A stretch of 63,403 nt of DNA, the filler included, from Octopus bimaculoides (Eukaryota): assembly GCF_001194135.2 (NCBI RefSeq). It is 8 parts of 6 records of this genome, joined end to end, with 100 filler letters (N's around TTAATTAATTAA, not from the genome) between each part and the next. Parts side by side here need not be neighbours in the genome. Positions count along the whole stretch, not along the records: positions 5,850 to 26,748 come from NC_069003.1; 7 more parts are not named here. One strand, written 5' to 3'. Under the pieces are notes generated by a model. It worked only from the letters and a program-made list of their open reading frames with translations, was not told where the DNA came from and ran no database searches. Shown piece after piece: positions 6,235 to 21,907 of the stretch. A program made the translations under genes and the position numbers. The first letter of the stretch is position 1; the number at the start of each line of letters is the position of its first letter.

Positions 6235-7082
6235 AAAGTGAAGTGAGCAACATTGTACGAGTAGGCAGTGAGCTCCTCAAGAAGCACTCTCTTCCTGACG
6301 ATCTTCTATACAGTCCCAAAACAGCTGGGCTCTCTTACCTTAGAGAAGACCTGGAAGGAAAGCACTCAGCATACAGAAAAAAATAAAACTATGCATGGGT
6401 ATGTTGCCCAGAAGCTTGAAGAAGACAGTAGAATTGACACAAAGCATAGCTGCTCTTGGACACAAGACCACTACATCACATCACACTTTGAAGACTATGC
6501 GCTTGCAGTCAAGGAATCGATTGCCACAAAGAAACAGTGATGCTCTTGTAATCCCAAGGTGCAACCGCATGTGTAGGCTATGTCATGTTTCTGTGGAAGA
6601 CATCATGCATGTGATTAGCAGCTGTCCTAAAATGTCACAGCACTACCTCCTTATGCAACATAATGCTGTTGCTAAAACAATTTACAATGCTGTCTGCTAA
6701 AAAGACTGCCCTGAAATAAACTTAGAAAATCCCTCTGTTATGGAATACATTCATAAACACCAACTCAAGGAATGATGGTGGAATATTCCCATCAAAACTT
6801 CTGTCAAATGTAAACATAATAGGTCAGATAGTATTGTTTGGGACAGAGGAGCAAAGGTATGTACCATCATAGAGGTCAGCTGCCCTGCAGATATAAATGT
6901 CTCTGAAAATCAAAGGAAAGGAGGATATCTATGGAGAACTGCTTCGAAACTTCCAGCTTCTATATCCAGACTATGAATTCATATTCATACCAATAAAAAT
7001 TGGAGCACTAAGTTTTGTCAGTAAATGCTTAAAGGAGAATCTGGATAAACTGGGATTTTCAGAAAGAGAAATCAACAATTAG
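6235..7082 (+). mobile_element. R4-clade LINE 3' half (post-RT, CCHC knuckle, RLE), decayed
   Basis: MHGYVAQKLEEDS..., CRLCHVSVEDIMHVISSCPKM (CCHC), WWNIPIKTSVKCKHNRSD, IIEVSCPAD, KEDIYGEL, IGALS; internal stops. Confidence 0.85.
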
Positions 7083-8780
7083 AACTAGTCACAACATCCT
7101 CACGAAGTATAGAAATGGAGTTCGGACAAGATAAATGCTCATACGTGATAGTCAACCGAGGAAAGACTGCCGACCAGGCAGCGAAAATTTTTTTTTTCTT
7201 TCACACGGAGTTCCGGACCCCAGTTACAAACTCATTTGCATACAACCAATAAGAGCTCAACTAACAAACTAATGTATGGGCGCATAACAAGTGATGGGCG
7301 ATAAGATAAGGTCACTTGGGTAAGGAATGACCATGCTTCTTTTCCCTTTATCTCTTTTAATAGTGCTTGTTGTTCTTATTAGAGCTGAACGGCACCTTTC
7401 CTTTCACACTTTTCAAACAATACTTCAATGGTCTGCCAGCACCAATGCTGTTTCTGTCACCAGCAACAACCTTTATTAACTTGACAACACGATCAAGGTG
7501 AGCTCTGATTGGATGTATGCAAATGAGTTCATTACTGGGCTCCAGAACTCTCGTGGGAAAAAATTTTGCGACCAGGCAGAGAACATGTATATCAGTGGCT
7601 TACCTATCTCCCCTATCTCTAATGATGAAAGCTACAAGTACCTCGGAATCAATGTGAACCTTGTATGCGTTGGTGCTGAGACTAAAGCCAGAATAACAAA
7701 AGAGTATTTCTGTAGACTCCGGAAAATATGGAGTTCAGCGCTGTCAGCATTTAACGAGATCTTATCTCACAACGCTTTTGCAGTACCAGTGCTAGTGCCA
7801 ACATTTTGGATATTGGACTGGATACTCGATGAGATACGCAGCCTGGACATCAAAACCAGAAAGGTACTGACCACCACTAGCAACTTACACATTAACAGTG
7901 ACACCAATAGGATTTATATGAGACGGAGTGATGACGGTGGAGTCATAAGGTCGGTCCAAACAGCCTTTGAATGTCGTATTGTATCACTCAGACAACACCT
8001 GCTGAACAGTAAAGAAAGAAAGGAGTACACTCCATGCATACTCAAAAGTGGGAGCATCAACATCTTCAGAGTTGGAGAACTACTATGCAAGTACTCTGAG
8101 AATACGGTTGTCCCATGCGGCCCAAAGGAAAGCTGGACTGGCTTACTTAAACAAAAGCTTGGAAGAGAAGCAGGCATCATACCAACAAAAAGCAATGCAT
8201 GAGTATATATCTCGTAAGCTAGGGAGCAACATCAGCATTGATACGAAGAATAGCCTTTCTTGGACCTGTGATAAATGCATTAAACAAAAGCTTGGAAGAG
8301 AAGCAGGCATCATACCAACAAAAAGCAATGCATGAGTATATATCTCGTAAGCTAGGGAGCAACATCAGCATTGATACGAAGAATAGCCTTTCCTGGACCT
8401 GTGATAAATGCATTACATCTCACCAAGAAGGAAATGCCTTCGCTATCCAGGAAGAGGAGATAACTACTAAATTCCTGATAAACAAAAGAGACTAAGATAC
8501 CACCAAACCTCTACGTTGGGATAAAAAATGTCGGGTCTGCTATACCAGTGTGGATGATATTACCCACATCATCAGCACCTGCACCAAAATGTGTACGAGA
8601 GACTACCTGCCCCTGAAGCATGATATAGTTGCAAAGACTATTTAAAATGCTATTCGTAGGAAGGTCTACCCTGATGTATATGTCAAAGGCATGTTAGAAC
8701 CAGCAGGTATTCACACCTTTAAAGACAAGGAATACTGATGGAACACCCAAATAATAACATCAATTCGGTGCAAACATGTG
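7083..8780 (+). mobile_element. Second R4-clade LINE fragment (RT C-terminal half to RLE start), interrupted by a MITE and a 133-bp duplication
   Basis: MEFGQDKC, YKYLGI, NAFAVPVL, RIYMRRSDDGG, CRVCYTSVDDITHIISTCTKM, WNTQI; related to 6235-7082. ORF 7498-8202 derives from it. Confidence 0.85.
7181..7569. mobile_element. Mutator(MULE)-like MITE, ~70-80 bp TIRs, 9-10 bp TSD
   Basis: GACCAGGCA(G) is duplicated at 7172-7180 and 7570-7578; the termini gcgaaaattt... and ...aaattttgc are long inverted repeats; removing it rejoins the R4 RT. Confidence 0.85.
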
Positions 8781-11035: not shown

Positions 11036-11178
11036 ATTTCGAACACAGATGGCAACGAATTTGCTGAAGGACAGAGTCAATAAGATTGACTCTGGTATAT
11101 AACTGATACTTTATTTCAACGACCCTTGAACGATGAGACGAAAGAGATATGAGATGAAAAACTTCGGTGAAATTGACT

Positions 11179-11184
11179 TTTATT
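11179..11184 (-). promoter_or_regulatory. Candidate polyadenylation signal AATAAA of CFAP57 copy A
   Basis: Lies ~150 nt after the stop, in a block conserved with the copy B 3' flank (18159-18164). Confidence 0.45.
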
Positions 11185-11336
11185 AGCAATAACAATATTA
11201 TATGTAAGAAAAAAATTCTTGCTTCACACAGCACGGTTTTTATCACTCAGAGTAAAAACGGACGTATGACAATATGCGATTCGCTTCGTCACATTAAAAT
11301 GGTAAAACTCCAACGATCAACAAATAAATTCCATTT

Positions 11337-14300
11337 TCATTTCTCTCTCTCCATTTTCGAAAGCAGACGACGGCTGTTCTCTTGTCTCCTCAACTGCAAC
11401 TCTGCTGCTAAGTTATTACGTTTGCTGTTCAGGTGTTGATTTTTCTGATTGATGCGTTTGGTGGTGGAGTTCAACGTATATTTCAGTTTGAGTATGGCAT
11501 ATTCGAAATGGTTCCGCTGCCGACCCCATTCGATCTGTAAATTGGGGTCTGAACTGGCGATCTTATCGACATTCTTAACAACATATTTTTCATAAAGAGT
11601 TTTTATGCAGTTCTTCAATTGGTGTGGATCTTGTATTTTAAAAGACATGAGGTTGTTTAAATCGGAGCAGAACCTGTCCCACAAATCTGTCTTTTGCTTT
11701 AGCTTTCTACGTACATCATCCAGCTCTTTAAAGGTGGCTCCTAATTTCATTTTCATTTCTGCTGTATTATAGTCCATTACGAAAAACTGCGTGGTGAAGT
11801 TTTCCAACTGGTTTCGCATACCAGCCATTTGTTTCTTCGTTTTATTGATTTCCGTCTCCCTCTCATCCACAAGCTGTCTGAGTTCGATAATCTTTTCCCA
11901 TTCCAATTTACATTTCAGTTTCGTGACACTTTGATTCATCAGCTTCAGTTCACAGAAACGTTTGTCTTCCTTAGTTAATCCTTGACATTGGAGCTTCACT
12001 TCTTCTCTTAAGATTTCTATGTTTTCCTCTAGATTATTTTTAACAATCTTTAGTCTTTCTAATTCCATCTTTAACTTCCAGCATTCATCTTCGTTTTCTT
12101 TTAATTGGTTGGGGAAAGCAAAGAGTTTCTTCCGCAAAACGTTACGTTCGAATTTTCTTTTAGAATAGGTAGATCTCTCGACATACAAAAGCTTTTCATA
12201 TTTGACTTTTGTGGAGAGGGATTCCATTTCGGCATCCTCTTCACTCAATTTCTCTGATTTTTCGCATTCTTTCCGCAACGTCAATAACTTTTCATCACAC
12301 TCATAAATTTTCTTCTCCAAATATTCGGTTTTCTTTTCATACTTATCTGCCAATTGTGTTTCTAAACTCTCTTGCATTAAATCCAATTTCTCTATCTCTT
12401 GTTCATGTTCATTTTCTAGTTGGATTAATTTCTCTTCAAGATATTTGATCTTTTCACATTCTATCATTAACTTTTTATTAGTAGTACACTCGAGGGATTT
12501 TATTTTTGTACAGTGATCGTTAATAGTTTCTGTCATTTTTTCATCATAACTAGATTTTTCTCTGACTTTTTCACCCTCTAAAATTTTATTTTTGTTTTTC
12601 AAATTTTCAATTACTTGATTATAATTTTCGGATACCTCTTTTACCTTGTCGTTGAAGTACTTGTCTCTGAGGTGCAGTTTATACTCGTTTTTCTTGGAAA
12701 GTTCTTCCACACGGGATTTCAGCTTCGAAATTGAACACATTTTTTCTTCTAACTCATTCACCGGCATTAAAATGTCTTCAGACCAAATGGTACTGTGGCC
12801 AAATTCTGTACTCTGATTCTCAGTATCATCAACCTTCCATATTGCAATCGAAAAATCTCTTGATGTTGAAATTAAGTATCGATCATCAGTCGTAAAAATC
12901 ATGTGTGTAGTTTCGAGACTATGACAAGGATAATTACGCCAGTTTTCACCTCGTATTGGAGGGCACGCCATGCTTCTTATATAACCATCATTAGTTCCTA
13001 CAAATAACATTGTATTGGACCAAGACAGAGCAACTGATGTGTAAAGAAACTCACTCGGTGGAAACGTTCGCAATATATTCGATTTGTGGATTTCGTTCAA
13101 AGAATGATCCGAGCTTACCACATATAGTTTCTTGTTATCAGTGTTAACTGCAACATCGTTACAGGCGCAGGATTTCAAGACACACTCACCGATTCGCTTC
13201 TCGGTTTTTATGTCCCATTCATAAATTGCCCCATCCAAACCGCATGAGATTAGATTATTGTCATCCATACACCAGGAGGTAGCTTGAACTTTACCGTTGT
13301 GACCTTTCAGGTTGGCGAGCATTTCGAAAGTTATCGACGAGTATACCTGTATAAAGTTGTTGTTGACCGCCGCGAACATGTGACCACCTCGACTGAAATT
13401 GCAATGTGTACACCTGCGGATGTTGATATCTTTAAACGGTTTGAAGTCGTCCCTAAGAATATACATGAAACTTAATCTGTCGAAGAAACCTGCCAGAAGA
13501 AATAGTCCCATTGGGTGCATAGATATACTATAGACTTCTTCTGAAAAGTTTTTAGAAAATTCTAAGCTAAACGTTTCGTGGTTCCACAATTTTATGGAAC
13601 CATCGAGGGAGCTTGTTGCAATGAAAGGTTTCCACAAAGAGACACAACATCCAGTGATATGTTTATAATGGAAAGGCTGTACTAAAACATCAAACACGTT
13701 TGATTCACTCTGTTTTGTTTCCGATGGATTAATTTGTGTAGAATACATTTGTTTCATATTGGTGCTAATAACGAGAACCTCCTCCGATGGATCCACCACC
13801 ATCCATTTTATAATTTGGTTACACAGGTCACTGTTTTCCAAAACATCTAACGGAAGCCAAACATTCCTAACAGACTTGTAAGTATGCCAGACTTCATCTC
13901 TTTCAAAAAACTGTACACATTTCTTACCACACGCTGTAATAAATCCTTTAGAATAACTGGTAACAGCCGTTACTCCGCACGACTTGATGGATTCGTCGGA
14001 AATATTCGAATATTGGAATACATTAAAATCAAGTCTTAAATCCGTATCTTCGATAAACAACACTCGGCCACTGCCTGTACCCACCAAAAGACGTTGTTTC
14101 GCATCCCAGCAATAGCATTTGAAATCTTGAGGTACGATCTTAGGAAAATTGAACTGTTTGTTTTTGCTTCCTTCGAAGCGGAACAATTTAAGAAACTTGT
14201 TGCCAAATACATACACGTTGAGATGTGTTTGAGGGTTGAAACTAACGCAATGAAGAATCTCCGGTGCAACAGAAACTGTCACTTTGGTCGAGAGAAGTAG

Positions 14301-14425
14301 TTTCGATCTTTTCCATGACCAGTAAAGTAAGGTTCGTGATGGGTCGTCACATATGGCCACAAGATATCGAGAAGTAGATGAAAAAGACAAACTAACGATC
14401 TTACAATGCAATACTTGACAAACTA
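11337..14425 (-). CDS. CFAP57: CFAP57/WDR65-like protein, copy A; intronless over the visible part, 5' end hidden in the N gap
   Basis: Open ORF of >1024 aa, open up to the gap edge. Motifs recalled from CFAP57: PSEE.L..ST...Q.YS, KPFIATSSLDGSIKLWN, SISMHP.G, GGHMFAAVN.N.IQVY, LKGHNGKV, ECVLKSC, then a coiled coil (ELxxxNEYKLHLRD; WGRQRNHFE). The given start at 14411 is an internal TTG. Confidence 0.92.
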
Positions 14426-15188
14426 NNNNNNNNNNNNNNNNNNNNNNNNNNNNNNNNNNNNNNNNNNNNNNNNNNNNNNNNNNNNNNNNNNNNNNNNNNN
14501 NNNNNNNNNNNNNNNNNNNNNNNNNNNNNNNNNNNNNNNNNNNNNNNNNNNNNNNNNNNNNNNNNNNNNNNNNNNNNNNNNNNNNNNNNNNNNNNNNNNN
14601 NNNNNNNNNNNNNNNNNNNNNNNNNNNNNNNNNNNNNNNNNNNNNNNNNNNNNNNNNNNNNNNNNNNNNNNNNNNNNNNNNNNNNNNNNNNNNNNNNNNN
14701 NNNNNNNNNNNNNNNNNNNNNNNNNNNNNNNNNNNNNNNNNNNNNNNNNNNNNNNNNNNNNNNNNNNNNNNNNNNNNNNNNNNNNNNNNNNNNNNNNNNN
14801 NNNNNNNNNNNNNNNNNNNNNNNNNNNNNNNNNNNNNNNNNNNNNNNNNNNNNNNNNNNNNNNNNNNNNNNNNNNNNNNNNNNNNNNNNNNNNNNNNNNN
14901 NNNNNNNNNNNNNNNNNNNNNNNNNNNNNNNNNNNNNNNNNNNNNNNNNNNNNNNNNNNNNNNNNNNNNNNNNNNNNNNNNNNNNNNNNNNNNNNNNNNN
15001 NNNNNNNNNNNNNNNNNNNNNNNNNNNNNNNNNNNNNNNNNNNNNNNNNNNNNNNNNNNNNNNNNNNNNNNNNNNNNNNNNTTAGAGAAAAAAAACCAAA
15101 GTTCTTTTTTTTAATTGAGTTTTTACCTGTAAATTTGGATTTTTATCCCTAATATAATAATAATAATAATAATTATTATATATATATA

Positions 15189-15345
15189 TTCGACGGGCTT
15201 CTTTCAGCTTCCGTCTACAAAATTCACTCACAAGGCTTTGGTCGGCCCGAGGCTATAGTAGAAGATACTTGCCCAAGGTGAGACTGAACCTAGAACCATG
15301 TAGTTGGGAAGCAAACTTCTTACCGCACATCCACACCTGCGTCTG
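15189..15345 (-). mobile_element. tRNA-derived SINE head (family with the gacggaaactgaaagaagcccgtcg core)
   Basis: Minus strand reads gcggtaagaagtttgcttcccaactacatggttctaggttcagtc...ccttgggcaag...gaagcccgtcg. Confidence 0.7.
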
Positions 15346-15399
<54 letters not shown>

Positions 15400-15579
15400 C
15401 ATGCATGCATGTATGTATGTATAAAGCATTTTGCTCGGCGTGCTAATAATTCTGCCAACTCACTACCTTTAGAAAGAGAATTATTAATATATAAATCCAA
15501 ACAACATATGAAAACTTGGCGGAGGAAAAGAGTGGGTTTCCTAGATCAGTAAGATTAATGATAATCATGTTTGTTGTGC

Positions 15580-17760
15580 ACTGTTGTGAACTAACACTTG
15601 CAGTAAAGATATGAGGGCAAAGAGAAAACCAGAGAGCCGATGTTCGTGGAGGAAGTTACTGGGTGAAGGTTCTTGGTGAGTTTGGACATAACAAAAGTTA
15701 TGAGAAGAGGAGATTTGGGTGTGTAGGTCATGCCTGGACGGAAGTGGCATGACTCCAGCAGCTCTGAGATAGACAAAGCAGAGAAATGAGACAGCGCATG
15801 TGGGCCATAGCCAAGAGAATGTTAGTGGCCTTATGTTTATCAATGGGCTGGTCATTTTTAGGATGGGCTGTCTTTGTGCGTCACAATCAGCAGTAGTGCC
15901 GTCCTAGATGTGAAAACAATGCCCCACTGTTGGCTCCGCCAGAACTTTGTAGAGGATAAATTATTGTTGGAGGTGGTGGGGGAGTGAAGTATCTTTTGGG
16001 TCGTTATGATCTGATTTGAGTTATGTTAATGATGTTTTTTAACCAGATCCTCGGTGATAGTAAAGCCCAACATTTGGAACAGTTTTGAGGTTAGACATGT
16101 GTGGTGTGGTGAAGTTTTCTTAGTCTTATCTTTTCAATAGCATAGAAAACACAAAGTAGAGCTTGCCTTTCCTTGCTGTTGAAAATGGGGTCAATGACGG
16201 TTCGACTTATGGCATCTAGTTTGTGAGTGGATGACGCATGTTTTGGAGAAGGTTAAGGAAGAACGAAATGTAATGCCATCTCCGAAAAGGGTGAACATTG
16301 TTAGACGTGCCGATACAGGAGATAGAAAATGGCGTTGTGGGGCGCGAGAGGGGCAAAAGTATTGCACTGGGGTACGCCGAAGTTGATAGAGTGAAGGTTA
16401 GAAAGGACTTCGTTAATACACGTTGCGATAGGGTGAGCTGATAGAGAAAGGACTTCGTTAATACACGTTGCGATAGGGTGAGCTGATAGGGAGCTACCGG
16501 TCTAAGAGATGAATGACGAGCGGAGCCCATAGGTGGGAAGTTTCGAAAGATTTGCTTGCTAAATAATGAGGAAAACTTTGCTGATGCCGAAATCAACAAT
16601 GTAGCCTTCGCCAAAGTTCTTCAAGATATAGCCTTCGCCAAAGTTCTTCAAGATATAGGAGAGCAAGTGACTAGCGGGTCTGTCTTCACGGAAGCCGTTG
16701 TGGTGATTGTTCAGAAGGGATGGAAATTCAAGGTTTGGGGGCCGGTGTTGTTCTGGGCAACAGTACCATCCTCCAGGGTGATTCAGAGAGTGGTCTTGCA
16801 TGAGCTACGCCCCTGGATAAAAGACGTCCGGATTTCTGAGGGTGGGTTTTCTTCTGCTGCTGATGTAAGGCTTGCTTCTCGTTTAAACCGCTTCAGCACA
16901 ACTCTGAGTGTATAGATTCGAGGTCTTGAGACATTGCGATTTTGTTGTATTCGAGATGTCAAGGGACAAACCTAAAAGGGAGTTTGTAACTTAGCTGATG
17001 GGTGGTCAGCAGGAATGATATATGAGCTCATTCGGAGGTCTTGTATTGTCGTTGGATGCGAATGTTGGAGACGTTGTGTATGTTATGTCTAAATGTGATC
17101 CTTAGTTACAATGAAGCAATGGTCAGACGACGCAGTAGGTGCCGAGACAGTTGCAGTTCGGTAGAGATTAGGTTTAGCAGTGAGGAAAGAGATCAAGAGC
17201 GTTTGGCGTATGTGTGTGTTGATCTGCGATACAAGTTGGAGATGAGACAAATTGATGCAATGAGTTGAAGATTGCAAAGGATTCGGTTTCTGCACCAATG
17301 ACATCACCGTGAGATGAATGAGACAACCATGAGATGTGAGTGTTGAAGCCACCAAAGACGATGACTTTGAGGATGGGTGAAATAAGATTTATGTCCCTAA
17401 TGCAAGACTTGATTTGGTTGAAGGTCTAGTTGGTAGTCTGCGAAGTTCGGAAAACGCTAGAAGGACGAAATGCATTTGGGTGAGTGAAAGAGGTAGACTG
17501 CGAGTCAAAGTAACTTGATGGCGTTCATATTTGAATCTACGAGAGAGAGAGATAAGTAAGAGGGAGAACGGAGTCTATGTAATCATAGACACCATCTTTC
17601 GTGGTGAAGTTAAAATTAAAAAATATAGCCCGGACAGCTGAGATGGGTTGGAGACGGAGATACAGAGTGTTCTGGATTTCGGAGAGGAATACGATATTTG
17701 ATTTTCGAGTAAGTATTGATGAATTGATTTAAGTTGAGACGAAATTCAAAGATATTGGAG
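15580..17760 (-). mobile_element. Decayed CR1/L2-like LINE (RT region)
   Basis: Minus-strand fragments LLNNHHNGFREDR, INFGVPQCNTFAPL (GVPQG), LFGDGITF (FADD) and LGFTITEDL; many stops. Confidence 0.7.
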
Positions 17761-18158
17761 AACAGGAGATAAAATTGCAGAAATGGAATTGGTGTAAAGA
17801 GATATTTATGAATGTCCCAGTGACATCAGTGATTAATTTAACCTCAGTACTTTACTGATGTTATATTTTATCGAGCCTGGAATATAAGAAAGACAAGGTT
17901 GATTTCGGCAAGATTTGAACTCAAAGTTAAGGTAACACAACCAAATCTGCAAGGCATTTCGTTTAAATGTTTACTGAATCTGCCAATCCACCGTGCCCAT
18001 TACCATTTGTGGTGACATCTATTTTTGAAATAAGGAAAGTGTACCAAAGAGTAAAGTCAATGACACTGACTTCGGTATTTGAGTGGTACTTTATTTCATC
18101 GACTCCTGAACGATGAGATGAAATATAAATGAAATGAAAGACTTTCGATGAAGTTGAC

Positions 18159-18164
18159 TTTATT
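18159..18164 (-). promoter_or_regulatory. Candidate polyadenylation signal AATAAA of CFAP57 copy B
   Basis: Homologous to 11179-11184 (gctAATAAAagtcaa context in both copies). Confidence 0.45.
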
Positions 18165-18349
18165 AGCAATAACAATATTATAAAAAAAAAGAATTCTTGC
18201 TTCACAGCATGGTTTTTATCACTCAATGTAAAAACGGACATGTGACAATACACGAATCGTTTCGTTTCATTTCGTTCGCATGATTAAAATCCAACGATCA
18301 ACAAATAACATCCATTTTCATTTCTCTCACTCCATTTAAAAGACCCCCC

Positions 18350-18640
18350 CCCCACCAAAGAAAAAAATTTCTTTTCTCTCTCTAATATTCCTTGCATCTT
18401 ATTGCTTTTGGTTGCTAGCTGACAATTCAACAGAGAGGCCTTTTAAGACAGTAAAAGACGGTTCTTTTCCCTCTCCAGCGAAAACTTTCCTTGAATTTTA
18501 TTGCTTTCGGCTGTTAGCAGACAATTCTACTGAGAGGCTTTTCAAGGCAGCAAAAAACGGTTCTTTTCTCTCACCAACGACAACTTTTCTCGAATTATAT
18601 TGCTTCTGGTTGTAAGCACACAATTCTGTAGAGTGACCTT
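18350..18640 (-). repeat. 99-bp tandem repeat (~2.9 units) of the CFAP57-B terminal coding segment
   Basis: Units are 18542-18640, 18443-18541 and a partial ~18360-18442; the plus-strand pseudo-ORF 18412-18615 shows the 33-codon period. Confidence 0.9.
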
Positions 18641-21600
18641 TTCCACAGTGTCCTTTGTTATAATCTTCAGTTTGTGTACCATGTATTCGAAATTATAACG
18701 CTGCCGATTCCATTTCTTATGTATGCTGACGTTTCTGTTTTTGTATGATGCGATGATCTTCTTGATATTCTTCTGGTTGTATTTTTCATAAAGAGCTTTG
18801 ATGCTGCCCTTCAGTTTCTGATGATCATCTATGAAAGATATGCAGTCTACAAGGTCGGAGTAGAACGTGTATAACAAGGCCGATTTTCGGTCCAGTCTTG
18901 TACGTACTCTGTCCAGTTCTCGAGAGGTAGCCACTAGTTTCTGTTTCGTTTCCTTTGTCGAGCAGTCCCTATTGGTTAACTGATTTGTTAATTTCTCCTG
19001 TTGACGTTGCATAATCTTCATTTCCACCCTCATGGTATTGATTTCATCTTCCCTCTCTTGTAAACACTGTCTCAATTCGATAATATGTTTAAAATCCAGG
19101 TCAGTTTTCAATTTCATGGTTTCCATGTTCTTCTGCACCAAATCATAGAAATGTTTCCCTTCACCTCGTGGCTTTTCCTCTCGAATATGCAGAACTTCCC
19201 CTAAATGCTTTATCCAATCCTCCTTCCTATTTATGATAATCTTCAATCTCTCAATCCCCAGTTTGTAATTGTTACATTCTTCATCACTTGCTTTTAGTTT
19301 TGTGGAGAATTTTAAGACCTTTTTCTTCAAAACACTATTTTCGTGTTTTAGTTCAGAAGTAAAATCTCTTTCTTGAAACAATAGTTGTTCGAAATTAGTT
19401 TTTCTAGAAACGAGCTCCATTTCGGCATCAACTTCGATCCGTTTCTGCATTTCCTCACATTCTTTCTGCTGCAGTAAAATATTTTCAGTGCACTGTTCCA
19501 TTTTCTTCTCTAAATCTACAAGCTTCTTTTCGTACTCTTCTATCAACTGGTCGAATAGAATTTCTTGCTTTTCTTCCAGTTCTTTTATCTCTTGTTTGTT
19601 TTTCTCTTGTACTACTATTAACATGTTTTCAAGATTCTTACAATTTTCGTCTTCTTCTAGTAACTTCTTATCGGTAACAGATTCGATTAATTGCAACTCT
19701 TGGCTGTGATTTTCGTTAATATGTGATATTTCTTCAATGCATTCCGCTTCTTGTTTGCTTTTATCCTTCTCTAGAATTTCATTTTTGACTTTCAAAATTT
19801 CAATTTTTTGATTATTTTCGGATATCTCATTTATTTTGTTGTAGTTCATAGTTTTAAGGCGCATTTTGTATTCCATTTCGTTTTCAAGTTCTTCAATGTG
19901 GATTTTCAACTTTGAAATTAAACAATTTCTTTTTTCCACATCAGATTTTGGAATTAAAATCTCGTTAGGATAAACGGTACCCTGGTCGCTTTTCAAATTC
20001 TCATCTTCAGCATTATTAACCTTCCATATTGCAATTGAAGCATCTCTTGATGTTGAAATTAAGTATCGATCATCAGTCGTAAAAATCATGTGCGTTGTTT
20101 CAAGACTATGACAAGGATAATTACACCATTTTCCACCTCGTATTGGAGGGCACGCCATGCTTCTTATATAACCATCATTAGTTCCTACAAATAACATTGT
20201 ATTGGACCAAGACAGAGCAACTGATGTGTAAAGAAATTTTCTCGATAGAAACGTTTGCAATATATTCGATTTGTGGATTTCGTTCAAAGAACGATCCGAG
20301 CTTACCACATATAGTTTCTTGTTATCAGTGTTAACTGCAACATCGTTACAGGCGCAGGATTTCAAGACACACTCACCGATTCGCTTCTCGGTTTTTATTT
20401 CCCATTCATAAACTGCCCCATCCAAACCGCATGAGATTAGATTATTGTCATCCATACACCAGGCGGTAGCTTGAACTTTACCGTTGTGACCTTTCAGGTT
20501 GGCCAGCATTTCGAAAGTTATCGACGAGTATACCTGTATAAAGTTGTTGTTGACTGCCGCGAACATGTGGCCACCTCGACTGAAATTGCAATGTGTACAC
20601 CTGCGGATGTTGATATCTCTAAACAGTTTGAAGTCGTCCCTAAGAATATACATGAAACGTAATTCGTCGCTGAAACCTGCCAGAAGAAATAGTCCCATTG
20701 GGTGCATAGATATGCTGTATACTTCTTCTGAAAAGTTTTTAGAAAATTCTAAGTTAAACGTTTCGCGGTTCCACACTTTTATGGAACCGTCGAGGGAGCT
20801 GGTTGCAATGAAAGGTTTCCACAAAGAGACACAACATCCAGTGATATGTTTATAATGGAAAGGCTGTACTAAAACATCAAACACATTTGATTCAGTCTTA
20901 TTTTTTGTTTCCGGTGGATTAACTTGTGTAGAATACATTTGTTTCATATTGGTGCTAATAACGAGAACCTCCTCCGATGGATTCACCACCATCCATTTTA
21001 TAATCTGGTCGCATAGTTTGTTATTCTCCAATGTATCTGACGGCAGCAAAACATCCCTAACAAACTTGTAATTATCGTTATCAATGCTTTCAAAAAACTG
21101 TACATATTTTGTACCACACGCAGTAATAAATCCATGAGAATAACTAACAATTGCCGTCACTCCATGCATCCTTGCGGCATCGTTTGGAAGATTCAAATAT
21201 TGGAATACGTTAAAATCAAGTTTTAAATACCTACCTTCAATACATAACACTCGACCACTGCCTGTACCCACCAAAAGACGTTGTTTCGCATCCCAGGAAT
21301 AGCATTTGAAATCTTGAGGTACAATCTTAGGGAAATTGAACTGTTTGTGCTTGTTTCTTACGAAACGGAACAATTTAAGAAGACGATTGCCAAACACATA
21401 CACGTCGAGATGATTAAGAGGGTGAAAGCTCACATGATGAAGAGTCTCTGGTTCTTGTGAAACCGTCACCTTGACCGAAATGGGTTCTTTCATTTCTTCC
21501 CATGACCAGTAAAGTAGGGTTCGTGATGAGTCGTCACATATGGCTACGACACATCGAGAATCAGATGAAAAAGACAAACTAATGATCGAACAAGTGTTTA

Positions 21601-21907
21601 ATTCTTGGCAAAATAAGGTCTTCCTTTTCCGTAACCTGAATAAATCAAAAATATTTACAAATGGTTTCTCGCATTTATAAGCAACAGCTGAAAAGTTACG
21701 ATTCGGACTTAAAGTCATGGCAGTTATTTCACATCCTTTCTCTGATACATTGAGCATCCTCATTGTTTTGTGTTGGGTGTTATAAAAAACACAGTAACAA
21801 CCACATGGATAAAGGATCGTTTGTTCGTCGAAATAAAAAACATTGTTAGAAATATCCGAACTGATTCCAATCAAATATTTTAAAATCGCTTTTGAAGAGA
21901 TAGCCAT
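18542..21907 (-). CDS. CFAP57: CFAP57/WDR65-like cilia/flagella protein, copy B, complete single-exon ORF of 1121 aa
   Basis: N-terminus NNVFYFDEQTILYPCG matches the CFAP57 NNIFYFDEQ.I.FPSG start; WD40 core as in copy A; coiled coil with ENEMEYKMRLKTMNY and WNRQRYNFE; no in-frame stop over 3366 nt. Confidence 0.95.
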   Translation of the reverse strand: MAISSKAILKYLIGISSDISNNVFYFDEQTILYPCGCYCVFYNTQHKTMRMLNVSEKGCEITAMTLSPNRNFSAVAYKCEKPFVNIFDLFRLRKRKTLFCQELNTCSIISLSFSSDSRCVVAICDDSSRTLLYWSWEEMKEPISVKVTVSQEPETLHHVSFHPLNHLDVYVFGNRLLKLFRFVRNKHKQFNFPKIVPQDFKCYSWDAKQRLLVGTGSGRVLCIEGRYLKLDFNVFQYLNLPNDAARMHGVTAIVSYSHGFITACGTKYVQFFESIDNDNYKFVRDVLLPSDTLENNKLCDQIIKWMVVNPSEEVLVISTNMKQMYSTQVNPPETKNKTESNVFDVLVQPFHYKHITGCCVSLWKPFIATSSLDGSIKVWNRETFNLEFSKNFSEEVYSISMHPMGLFLLAGFSDELRFMYILRDDFKLFRDINIRRCTHCNFSRGGHMFAAVNNNFIQVYSSITFEMLANLKGHNGKVQATAWCMDDNNLISCGLDGAVYEWEIKTEKRIGECVLKSCACNDVAVNTDNKKLYVVSSDRSLNEIHKSNILQTFLSRKFLYTSVALSWSNTMLFVGTNDGYIRSMACPPIRGGKWCNYPCHSLETTHMIFTTDDRYLISTSRDASIAIWKVNNAEDENLKSDQGTVYPNEILIPKSDVEKRNCLISKLKIHIEELENEMEYKMRLKTMNYNKINEISENNQKIEILKVKNEILEKDKSKQEAECIEEISHINENHSQELQLIESVTDKKLLEEDENCKNLENMLIVVQEKNKQEIKELEEKQEILFDQLIEEYEKKLVDLEKKMEQCTENILLQQKECEEMQKRIEVDAEMELVSRKTNFEQLLFQERDFTSELKHENSVLKKKVLKFSTKLKASDEECNNYKLGIERLKIIINRKEDWIKHLGEVLHIREEKPRGEGKHFYDLVQKNMETMKLKTDLDFKHIIELRQCLQEREDEINTMRVEMKIMQRQQEKLTNQLTNRDCSTKETKQKLVATSRELDRVRTRLDRKSALLYTFYSDLVDCISFIDDHQKLKGSIKALYEKYNQKNIKKIIASYKNRNVSIHKKWNRQRYNFEYMVHKLKIITKDTVEKVTLQNCVLTTRSNIIREKLSLVREKNRFLLP

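What the first reader, a model, noticed from the sequence alone, without database searches (positions are those of the whole stretch)
12831..21005. Sharp mosaic between paralogs: homogenised WD40 core, divergent coiled coil
Seen: A 12831-13815 and B 20018-21005 are about 90% identical in protein, with long runs identical even at third codon positions (e.g. A 13081-13200 versus its B counterpart). Identity falls abruptly after ...IAIWKV to roughly 35-45% in the coiled coil and is roughly 60-70% in the N-terminal repeats (by eye). Inference: recent gene conversion keeps the propeller core uniform while the tail that lies along the doublet diversifies.
Basis: partly seen in the sequence, partly recalled or inferred. 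Interest (0 to 1): 0.7.

Follow-up and report, generated by a model that had tools for sequence, protein, structure and literature searches.

The report
Block-wise gene conversion, octopus CFAP57 paralogs
Two neighbouring intronless copies of the ciliary gene CFAP57 in Octopus bimaculoides have repeatedly overwritten each other's second WD40 propeller by gene conversion, while their coiled-coil tails diverged long ago; this is a clean but ordinary case of domain-limited concerted evolution.

Summary
A 12831-13815 and B 20018-21005 are 95.2% identical in DNA and 91.8% in protein. The coiled coil is 41% identical and the N-terminal part 68%.

The window is Octopus bimaculoides chromosome scaffold C23. 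A and B belong to a cluster of five intronless, fast-evolving CFAP57-like genes (A-E). A sixth, canonical-type copy (F) lies 1 Mb away.

- **Synonymous divergence:** A-B dS is 0.07 in the block and 1.08 in the tail. Between orthologues, dS is uniform along the gene (about 0.1-0.15).
- **Trees with orthologues:** with O. sinensis and O. vulgaris copies, A and B group by species only in the block. There, 43 sites group by species and 3 by orthology. Elsewhere the counts are 1/57, 0/41, 1/43 and 4/287.
- **Both lineages:** shared-derived changes occur in each lineage (15 and 14 sites). The block edges coincide between lineages, and the right edge falls on the last strand of propeller 2.

A's N-terminus and part of its 5' flank exchange with E, which lies 130 kb away in inverted orientation. 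B carries an older C-like tract.

An assembly artefact is unlikely, because two independent long-read assemblies show the same mosaic. The gap is collinear with the orthologous locus.

This is a new member of a known kind.

The parts
11337..14425 (-). Copy A: intronless CFAP57-like ORF. Its 5' end (about 107 codons) is lost in the assembly gap; the stop codon is at 11337-11339.
   Evidence: ORF and translation. PDB CFAP57 hits and Pfam propeller hits. Orthologues As/Av are intact 1131-aa ORFs.
18542..21907 (-). Copy B: complete intronless CFAP57-like ORF of 1121 aa.
   Evidence: 8j07_i4, E 1.6e-196. Orthologues Bs/Bv are intact 1134-aa ORFs.
12810..13814 (-). A side of the A/B conversion block (last blade of propeller 1 plus propeller 2).
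   Evidence: By-orthology sites stop at alignment column 1008 (A 13815) and resume at column 2024 (A about 12808). 44 by-species sites lie in between. dS is 0.07.
19997..21004 (-). B side of the A/B conversion block (B aa about 302-630).
   Evidence: The AF2 model puts the last beta strand at aa 625-632 (..SIAIWKV), followed by the linker and helices.
14154..14425 (-). Visible part of the A/E conversion block (propeller 1). It is 100% identical to copy E for the first 209 nt next to the gap.
   Evidence: Quartet sites in N1 are 13 by species and 1 by orthology. By-species sites span columns 327-606.
14426..15081 (.). Assembly gap hiding A's start codon, about 107 codons and proximal 5' flank.
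   Evidence: Collinearity with O. sinensis: 517 nt there against 752 nt here. A likely cause is near-identity with E, which is an inference.
15501..15725 (-). A's 5' flank segment, 96% identical to E's 5' flank. It occurs only twice in the genome.
20902..21219 (-). Older B/C-like tract in B (end of propeller 1). It predates the species split.
   Evidence: B-C dS is 0.17-0.22 there against 0.35-0.96 elsewhere. The B clade joins the C clade in N2, with orthology kept. Quartet sites are 2 by species and 13 by orthology.
11340..12809 (-). A's linker plus coiled-coil tail, with no exchange with B.
   Evidence: A-B dS is 0.48 (link) and 1.08 (tail). Quartet counts are 1/43 and 4/287.
18545..19996 (-). 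B's linker plus coiled-coil tail.
   Evidence: Same calls as the A tail. Helices span aa 654-1117 in the model.
11075..11356 (-). A's 3' flank, homologous to B's 3' flank (18055-18337) at 81.6% identity. It is 68-75% identical to the 3' flanks of C, D and E.
18388..18641 (-). 99-bp tandem repeat (2.6 copies) spanning B's stop codon. It accounts for B's altered, shorter C-terminus.
   Evidence: alignment.

Best explanation
A and B are two members of a five-gene cluster of intronless, fast-evolving CFAP57 (WDR65/FAP57)-like genes on Octopus bimaculoides scaffold C23. The two genes are old: tail dS is about 1, and in the tail A is sister to E while B stands apart.

An internal block of about 1 kb has been copied between them by non-reciprocal, non-allelic recombination, that is, interlocus gene conversion during double-strand-break repair. 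The block encodes the last blade of propeller 1 and all of propeller 2. An exchange before the split from O. vulgaris/sinensis put a B-type block into A. Further exchanges followed independently in both lineages, so that A and B now group by species inside the block.

The block edges are the same in both lineages. I infer the cause is that the flanks are only about 60-75% identical, too diverged to support heteroduplex, so the block persists as a self-maintaining island of homology. Its right edge coincides with the end of the propeller domain.

A also exchanges its 5' flank and propeller 1 with E, which lies 130 kb away in inverted orientation. B carries an older C-like tract. The family is therefore a multi-donor mosaic whose coiled-coil tails evolve independently.

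Shown: the mosaic, its boundaries, the by-species grouping and the intact ORFs. Inferred: the repair mechanism, the homology-island reason for the stable edges, and any functional benefit.
For: Family and organism:
- PDB CFAP57 hit at E 1.6e-196. NCBI names of the same proteins identify O. bimaculoides.
- Six single-ORF copies are present.

dS:
- A-B is 0.07 in the block against 1.08 in the tail.
- Orthologue dS is flat along the gene (E-Ev 0.08-0.16; D-Dv 0.07-0.23).
- Within-species paralogue dS (A-B 0.07, As-Bs 0.09) is below orthologue dS in the block (A-As 0.18, B-Bs 0.13).

Trees and tests:
- Orthology groups get 100/100 support in the tail and link.
- In the core, (A,B) has 99/99 support and (As,(Bs,Bv)) 100/99.
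- In N1, As joins Ev (99/95), while A and E sit in an unresolved fork of the same four-member clade (99/99).
- The AU tests reject orthology in the core and in N1, and reject A+B in the tail.

Quartet sites:
- Core: 43 by species and 3 by orthology. Flanks: 1/57, 0/41, 1/43 and 4/287.
- Replicated with O. vulgaris Av/Bv: 42 and 2.
- Polarised with outgroups: 15 shared-derived in the O. bimaculoides pair, 14 in the O. sinensis pair, 15 ambiguous, spread over all three codon positions.

Other support:
- Block edges are shared by both lineages.
- Permutation test gives p <= 0.0005.
- The block is flanked on both sides by unexchanged sequence, so the exchange was non-crossover.
Against: - No reads, population data or pedigree are available, so no conversion event is seen directly.
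- The O. bimaculoides assembly is highly fragmented (713,915 contigs). The 100%-identical A=E stretch abuts a gap and could partly reflect gap filling.
- There is no rise in GC at four-fold sites in the block (0.34-0.38 against 0.41-0.56 in the tail), so there is no GC-biased conversion signature.
- Post-split exchange between A and E in O. bimaculoides rests on near-identity plus only 1 polarised site, against 7 in the other lineage.
- Expression and function of A and B are unknown.
Confidence: 0.9

Rival explanations
1. Assembly artefact. The block was collapsed, chimerically joined or mis-polished between copies in the fragmented O. bimaculoides assembly, and the true A and B differ there as much as elsewhere.
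For: The assembly has 713,915 contigs. A gap sits inside A, and the sequence next to it is 100% identical to E. A 263-bp unplaced contig duplicates part of B.
Against: A and B still differ at 44 scattered sites in the block, so it is not a collapse. No third block sequence exists anywhere in the genome. The same block, with the same edges, is seen for As/Bs in the PacBio-based O. sinensis assembly and for Av/Bv in the ONT-based O. vulgaris assembly. As and Av agree at 99.1% in the block.
Confidence: 0.03
2. Selection only. Strong purifying selection on the propeller keeps A and B alike, with no sequence exchange.
For: The propeller is the more conserved half across all CFAP57 homologues. dN is lower in the block.
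Against: Synonymous divergence drops 15-fold (0.07 against 1.08), while orthologue dS is uniform along the gene. Paralogues group by species in the block. Omega between orthologues in the block is 0.56-0.69, which is not strong constraint.
Confidence: 0.01
3. Unequal crossing-over or duplication produced chimeric genes once (A = E head + B middle + own tail), with no later exchange.
For: A and B are tandem, in the same orientation and 7 kb apart. In both species lineages the A/B core forms a clade apart from E, so a first exchange predates the species split.
Against: The block is internal, with unexchanged sequence on both sides. A single crossover cannot do that. Gene order C-B-A and copy number are the same in all three species. 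There are 15 and 14 shared-derived sites in the two lineages after their split, which needs later exchanges in both.
Confidence: 0.05

Closest known systems
Domain- or block-limited interlocus gene conversion in tandem gene families (for example the tandem, sperm-related Sdic family of Drosophila, PMC7475035, and primate X-linked ampliconic testis genes, PMC13616518; globin, opsin and RHD/RHCE cases from my own knowledge)
   Same: Non-reciprocal exchange between nearby paralogues. Sharp tracts, low dS inside and high outside, and paralogues that group by species only in the tract. The genes evolve fast (omega about 0.8-1 for A, B and E).
   Different: One gene (A) has two different partners for two adjacent structural modules. 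One partner is inverted and 130 kb away. The block edges have been stable since a split dated at about 34 Myr in PMC10700109. No GC-biased signature is seen. The two papers were only listed in a search and not read.
CFAP57 / WDR65 / FAP57 (human 8j07, bovine 9fqr, Chlamydomonas 8glv)
   Same: Two N-terminal WD40 propellers plus a long coiled coil. Full-length homology at E 1.6e-196 to 1.5e-135.
   Different: A-E form a divergent octopod clade separate from the canonical-type copy F. They are about 100-130 aa shorter at the C-terminus and intronless. Most evolve with omega near 1.
CFAP57 paralogue heterodimers in ciliates and kinetoplastids (Tetrahymena CFAP57A/C, PMC10504270; PDB 8tid W/w; Trypanosoma CMF5/CMF6, 9e5c)
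   Same: Several CFAP57 paralogues in one genome. In Tetrahymena two of them pair through the coiled coil and span the 96-nm repeat. Pairs of paralogous chains occur in the same PDB entries.
   Different: Whether the octopus paralogues dimerise with each other, or are even co-expressed, is unknown. No conversion has been reported for those systems in the papers I read.

Membership tests
CFAP57/WDR65/FAP57 protein family | Significant full-length sequence homology to experimentally placed CFAP57 chains | tested here: met
   8j07_i4 at E 1.6e-196, 9fqr_Hy at 5.9e-194, 8glv_Cp at 1.5e-135 with alignment 8-1087 against 7-1089.
CFAP57/WDR65/FAP57 protein family | Architecture: tandem WD40 beta-propellers followed by a long coiled coil | tested here: met
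   Pfam Beta-prop_EML, Beta-prop_EML_2 and WD40 hits. The AF2 model has beta strands to aa 632 and helices at 654-1117 (pLDDT 69.9).
CFAP57/WDR65/FAP57 protein family | One-to-one orthology with canonical CFAP57 | tested here: not met
   Copy F (1255 aa, 10.59 Mb) groups with the O. vulgaris and Argonauta F-type proteins, next to the chiton outgroup. A-E form a separate long-branched clade. A and B are CFAP57-like paralogues, not the orthologue.
CFAP57/WDR65/FAP57 protein family | Location on the doublet's 96-nm repeat and a role in docking inner dynein arms | not testable with these tools
   This needs proteomics or cryo-ET of octopus cilia or sperm. Known only for other organisms (PMC10504270).
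Interlocus gene conversion / concerted evolution | Sharply bounded tract with much lower synonymous divergence than its flanks, not explained by local mutation rate | tested here: met
   dS is 0.07 against 0.42-1.08. Orthologue dS is flat. Permutation p <= 0.0005.
Interlocus gene conversion / concerted evolution | Paralogues group by species inside the tract and by orthology outside | tested here: met
   Trees, AU tests, and quartet sites 43/3 inside against 6/428 outside.
Interlocus gene conversion / concerted evolution | Non-crossover: unexchanged sequence on both sides, with copy number and order unchanged | tested here: met
   N2 and link/tail keep orthology. Gene order C-B-A is the same in three species.
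Interlocus gene conversion / concerted evolution | Direct observation of events (polymorphic tracts, sperm or pedigree typing) | not testable with these tools
   No reads or population data are available.
Interlocus gene conversion / concerted evolution | GC-biased signature (frequent, but not defining) | tested here: not met
   GC at four-fold sites is 0.34-0.38 in the block against 0.41-0.56 in the tail.
Retrocopy-derived gene family | Intronless copies of a gene that carries introns in outgroups | tested here: met
   All six octopus copies are single ORFs. The chiton CFAP57 gene spans 11.5 kb and does not translate colinearly.
Retrocopy-derived gene family | Poly(A) remnant and target-site duplications | not tested
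   The duplications are old (tail dS about 1), so such marks are not expected to survive.

The most novel reading that the evidence does not exclude
The conversion blocks are structural modules with specific partners: A shares propeller 1 with E and propeller 2 with B, and the edges have been stable since the split from O. vulgaris. On this reading they are kept by selection, not merely by residual homology. The paralogues would then assemble as heterodimers, or compete for the same axonemal docking sites, as Tetrahymena CFAP57A/C do. Conversion would keep the docking propellers interchangeable while the tails set different registers or doublet or cell-type specificity, for example in sperm flagella.
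Probability: 0.12. Interest if true: 0.6.

Novelty: new member of a known kind. Interest (0 to 1): 0.38.

Why it matters
It gives a well-controlled example of domain-limited concerted evolution in a cephalopod, replicated in two lineages. The gene family encodes a structurally mapped axonemal ruler/adaptor protein.

It matters in practice for annotation and phylogenetics of octopus CFAP57-like genes. Whole-gene trees would mislead. Current gene models for A, B, Av and Bv are truncated or carry a spurious N-terminus.

If the paralogues prove to be sperm-specific and to heterodimerise, the family would be a natural experiment on which CFAP57 modules must stay alike and which may diverge.

No paper holding both 'CFAP57' and 'octopus' exists in the searched library.

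Tried and rejected
- **GC-biased conversion:** no GC4 rise in the block.
- **A's 5' flank as a transposon:** rejected. The 15500-15810 segment occurs only twice in the genome. The stretch directly after the gap (about 15177-15423) is microsatellite plus SINE-like sequence.
- **The unplaced contig C66098 as a third variant:** it is 100% B, so it is only redundant.
- **Hidden extra copies of the block:** none. Five genomic copies plus that contig.
- **Higher intrinsic synonymous rate in the tail:** rejected by orthologue dS.
- **Pseudogenes drifting neutrally (omega about 1):** rejected. In simulation, 0 of 1000 neutral replicates keep the ORF open even at d = 0.06, and the ORFs are intact in three species.
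- **Ongoing B/C conversion:** not supported. Orthology is kept, at 2/13 sites in N2, so the tract predates the split.
- **A/E exchange across the whole 5' flank:** the flank quartet is mostly orthologous (39 against 3). Only about 15501-15725 is A=E-like.
- **First homologue search:** it did not list the O. sinensis/vulgaris A and B orthologues. They were reached by walking from the C orthologue.
- **Pomacea protein look-up:** found nothing.
- **Pfam on the other window ORFs:** only one weak zf-RVT hit.
Full report
**What is there**

The piece (window 5850-26748) is G000:C23:11651701-11678504 of a 2.34-Gb assembly with 145,327 sequences. NCBI names attached to the same proteins identify Octopus bimaculoides. 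The size and scaffold count match GCA_001194135.2 as tabulated in PMC10700109.

Two long minus-strand ORFs dominate the piece:
- A is at 11337-14425 and is cut by the gap.
- B is at 18542-21907 and encodes 1121 aa.

Both are full-length homologues of the axonemal protein CFAP57/WDR65. The human chain 8j07_i4 hits at E 1.6e-196 and Chlamydomonas 8glv_Cp at 1.5e-135. Pfam finds the EML-type propellers and WD40 repeats. An AlphaFold2 model of B (mean pLDDT 69.9) has beta strands up to aa 632, a linker at 633-653 and helices at 654-1117.

A 13081-13200 matches at 119 of 120 bases. Protein identity is 68% N-terminal to the block and 41% after IAIWKV.

Sliding-window dS is 0-0.25 in the block and 1-2.4 in the coiled coil. 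A permutation test on polymorphic sites gives p <= 0.0005 for the A-B fragment, also with third positions alone.

**The gap**

The intergenic DNA and A itself are collinear with the O. sinensis locus on both sides of the gap. Window 15177 corresponds to L012 17022, and window 14425 to L012 17539. That is 517 nt in O. sinensis against 752 nt here, of which 656 are N. The orthologous ORF runs through this stretch uninterrupted. The join is therefore sound. About 107 codons of A are simply missing, and the frame across the gap cannot be checked.

**The family**

The genome holds five intronless CFAP57-like genes within 150 kb:
- A, B and C are on the minus strand at 11.663, 11.670 and 11.686 Mb.
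- E and D are on the plus strand at 11.795 and 11.811 Mb.

A canonical-type copy F (1255 aa) lies at 10.59 Mb.

Orthologues of all five cluster genes are intact single ORFs in O. vulgaris and/or O. sinensis, in the same order. I reached them by walking from the C orthologue.

A protein tree of the tail places F with the canonical proteins. A-E form a separate clade in which C and D have Argonauta counterparts, while A, B and E are long-branched.

**The decisive test**

*Orthologue dS.* It is flat along the gene. E-Ev is 0.08-0.16 and D-Dv is 0.07-0.23. The tail therefore has no higher mutation rate.

*A-B dS by segment*:

| Segment | A-B dS |
|---|---|
| N1 | 0.42 |
| N2 | 0.61 |
| Core block | 0.07 |
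| Link | 0.48 |
| Tail | 1.08 |

In the block, within-species paralogue dS (A-B 0.07; As-Bs 0.09) is below orthologue dS (A-As 0.18; B-Bs 0.13).

*ML trees by segment*. The link and tail give clean orthology groups at 100/100, with A sister to E and B apart. In the core, (A,B) has 99/99 support and (As,(Bs,Bv)) has 100/99.

*AU tests*:
- In the core they reject A+As (p 1.7e-4), B+Bs+Bv (p 4e-9) and A+As+E+Ev (p 6e-8).
- In the tail they reject A+B (p 1.8e-83).

*Quartet site counts for A, B, As, Bs* (by species / by orthology):

| Segment | By species | By orthology |
|---|---|---|
| Core | 43 | 3 |
| N1 | 1 | 57 |
| N2 | 0 | 41 |
| Link | 1 | 43 |
| Tail | 4 | 287 |

With O. vulgaris Av/Bv the core count is 42 by species and 2 by orthology.

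*Polarisation with the other paralogues.* 15 sites are shared-derived in the O. bimaculoides pair, 14 in the O. sinensis pair and 15 are ambiguous. They are spread over all three codon positions. Exchange therefore went on in both lineages after their split. PMC10700109 dates that split at about 34 Myr.

*Block edges.* By-orthology sites end at column 1008 (A 13815, B 21005) and restart at column 2024 (A about 12808). The edges are the same in both lineages.

**A wider mosaic**

A's visible N-terminus is 100% identical to E for 209 nt next to the gap and about 97-98% identical for the next 300 nt.
- In N1, As joins Ev (99/95), and A and E sit unresolved in the same clade (99/99).
- Quartet sites are 13 by species and 1 by orthology.
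- AU tests reject A+As (p 0.0045) and E+Ev (p 0.006).
- A 225-nt piece of A's 5' flank, present only twice in the genome, is 96% identical to E's flank. Further upstream, orthology returns.

B carries a C-like tract at about 20902-21219 with dS of about 0.2. It predates the species split.

So A has an E-type head, a B-type middle and its own tail.

**Mechanism**

An internal tract flanked by unexchanged sequence, with gene order and number conserved in three species, is non-crossover interlocus gene conversion.

The stable edges are best explained by the flanks being only about 60-75% identical, which is too diverged to extend heteroduplex. This is an inference. The right edge also coincides with the last strand of propeller 2, so selection on a whole domain cannot be excluded. 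There is no GC-biased signature.

**Rivals**

- *Collapse or mis-polishing* is unlikely. There are 44 scattered A-B differences and no third block copy in the genome. The same mosaic appears in a PacBio-based and an ONT-based assembly of sister species.
- The 100% A=E stretch beside the gap is the one place where an artefact remains possible. The likeliest reason for the gap itself is that near-identity.
- *Selection alone* is refuted by dS and by topology.
- *A single chimeric origin* is refuted by the shared-derived sites in both lineages.

**Selection regime**

Whole-gene omega between species:

| Gene | Omega |
|---|---|
| A | 0.83 |
| B | 1.04 |
| E | 0.88 |
| D | 0.48 |
| C | 0.11 |

Tail omega for A and B is 1.0-1.4. 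Yet in simulation, 0 of 1000 neutrally evolved copies keep the ORF open, and the ORFs are intact in three species. The genes are therefore functional and fast-evolving, a pattern typical of reproductive proteins (my own knowledge). Expression was not testable.

**Verdict**

The finding is real and correctly interpreted in its main point. It is richer than described, and it belongs to a well-known kind of process.

Noticed in passing
G000:C23 10.59 Mb (L006) and 11.66-11.81 Mb (L001-L005); L013: All six octopus CFAP57-type genes, including the canonical-type copy F, are single uninterrupted ORFs. The chiton (Liolophura) CFAP57 gene spans 11.5 kb and does not translate colinearly. This suggests the octopod or cephalopod gene was replaced by a retrocopy before the expansion.
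   Followed up: partly
whole genes A, B, C, D, E against their O. sinensis/vulgaris orthologues: Very uneven constraint. Omega is 0.11 for C and 0.48 for D, but 0.83-1.04 for A, B and E, with ORFs intact in three species. Neutral simulation never keeps them open.
   Followed up: partly
window 14426-15810 and protein P0005: The public gene model for A (1085 aa) begins with about 65 residues that have no counterpart in any paralogue or in As/Av. They appear to be spliced in from beyond the gap, so the true N-terminus is unknown in this assembly.
   Followed up: partly
window 21494-21907; L010 21329-22927; L014 17449-19017: Other gene models are truncated. B is modelled from an internal Met (983 aa against the 1121-aa ORF with a conserved N-terminus). 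O. vulgaris Bv and Av are called as 532- and 522-aa fragments although the ORFs are 1134 and 1131 aa.
   Followed up: partly
window 18388-18641: A 99-bp tandem repeat (2.6 copies, 80% match) straddles B's stop codon. B ends ...REKNRFLLP, shorter than the ...RRLLSIMERAK-type ends of the other copies.
   Followed up: partly
G000:C66098:1-263 (L007): An unplaced 263-bp contig is 100% identical to B (aa 505-591) and 97% identical to A. It starts inside the 106-nt stretch where A and B are identical. It is probably an assembler leftover at a repeat boundary.
   Followed up: yes
L012 17178-17260; L014 15571-15650: In O. sinensis and O. vulgaris the A orthologue has Ile where the other copies have the start Met (..QIASSK..). 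Its ORF starts 7 codons further upstream (MFGELSQ...).
   Followed up: no
window 11075-11356 and 18055-18337: The 3' flanks of A and B are 81.6% identical, against about 68-75% between the other copies' 3' flanks. That is more similar than the adjacent coiled-coil coding DNA (about 60%). It may be another, older exchange, or constraint on a 3' UTR.
   Followed up: partly
window 15177-15423; L005 780-1000: A (CA)n/(TACA)n microsatellite and a SINE-like element lie directly beside the gap in A's 5' flank. E has a different SINE-like insertion at the corresponding point.
   Followed up: partly
window 15350-17850: Strong positive GC skew (0.30-0.37) lies across the A-B intergenic region. Two perfect short tandem duplications (45 bp x2 at 16400-16489; 27 bp x2 at 16602-16658) lie inside it. 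The cause is unknown.
   Followed up: no
window 8147-8415 and 6395-6700: A 133-bp unit is repeated twice at 99% identity. An ORF has a weak zf-RVT hit (E 6.8e-4, below the Pfam cut-off), probably retroelement debris downstream of A.
   Followed up: no
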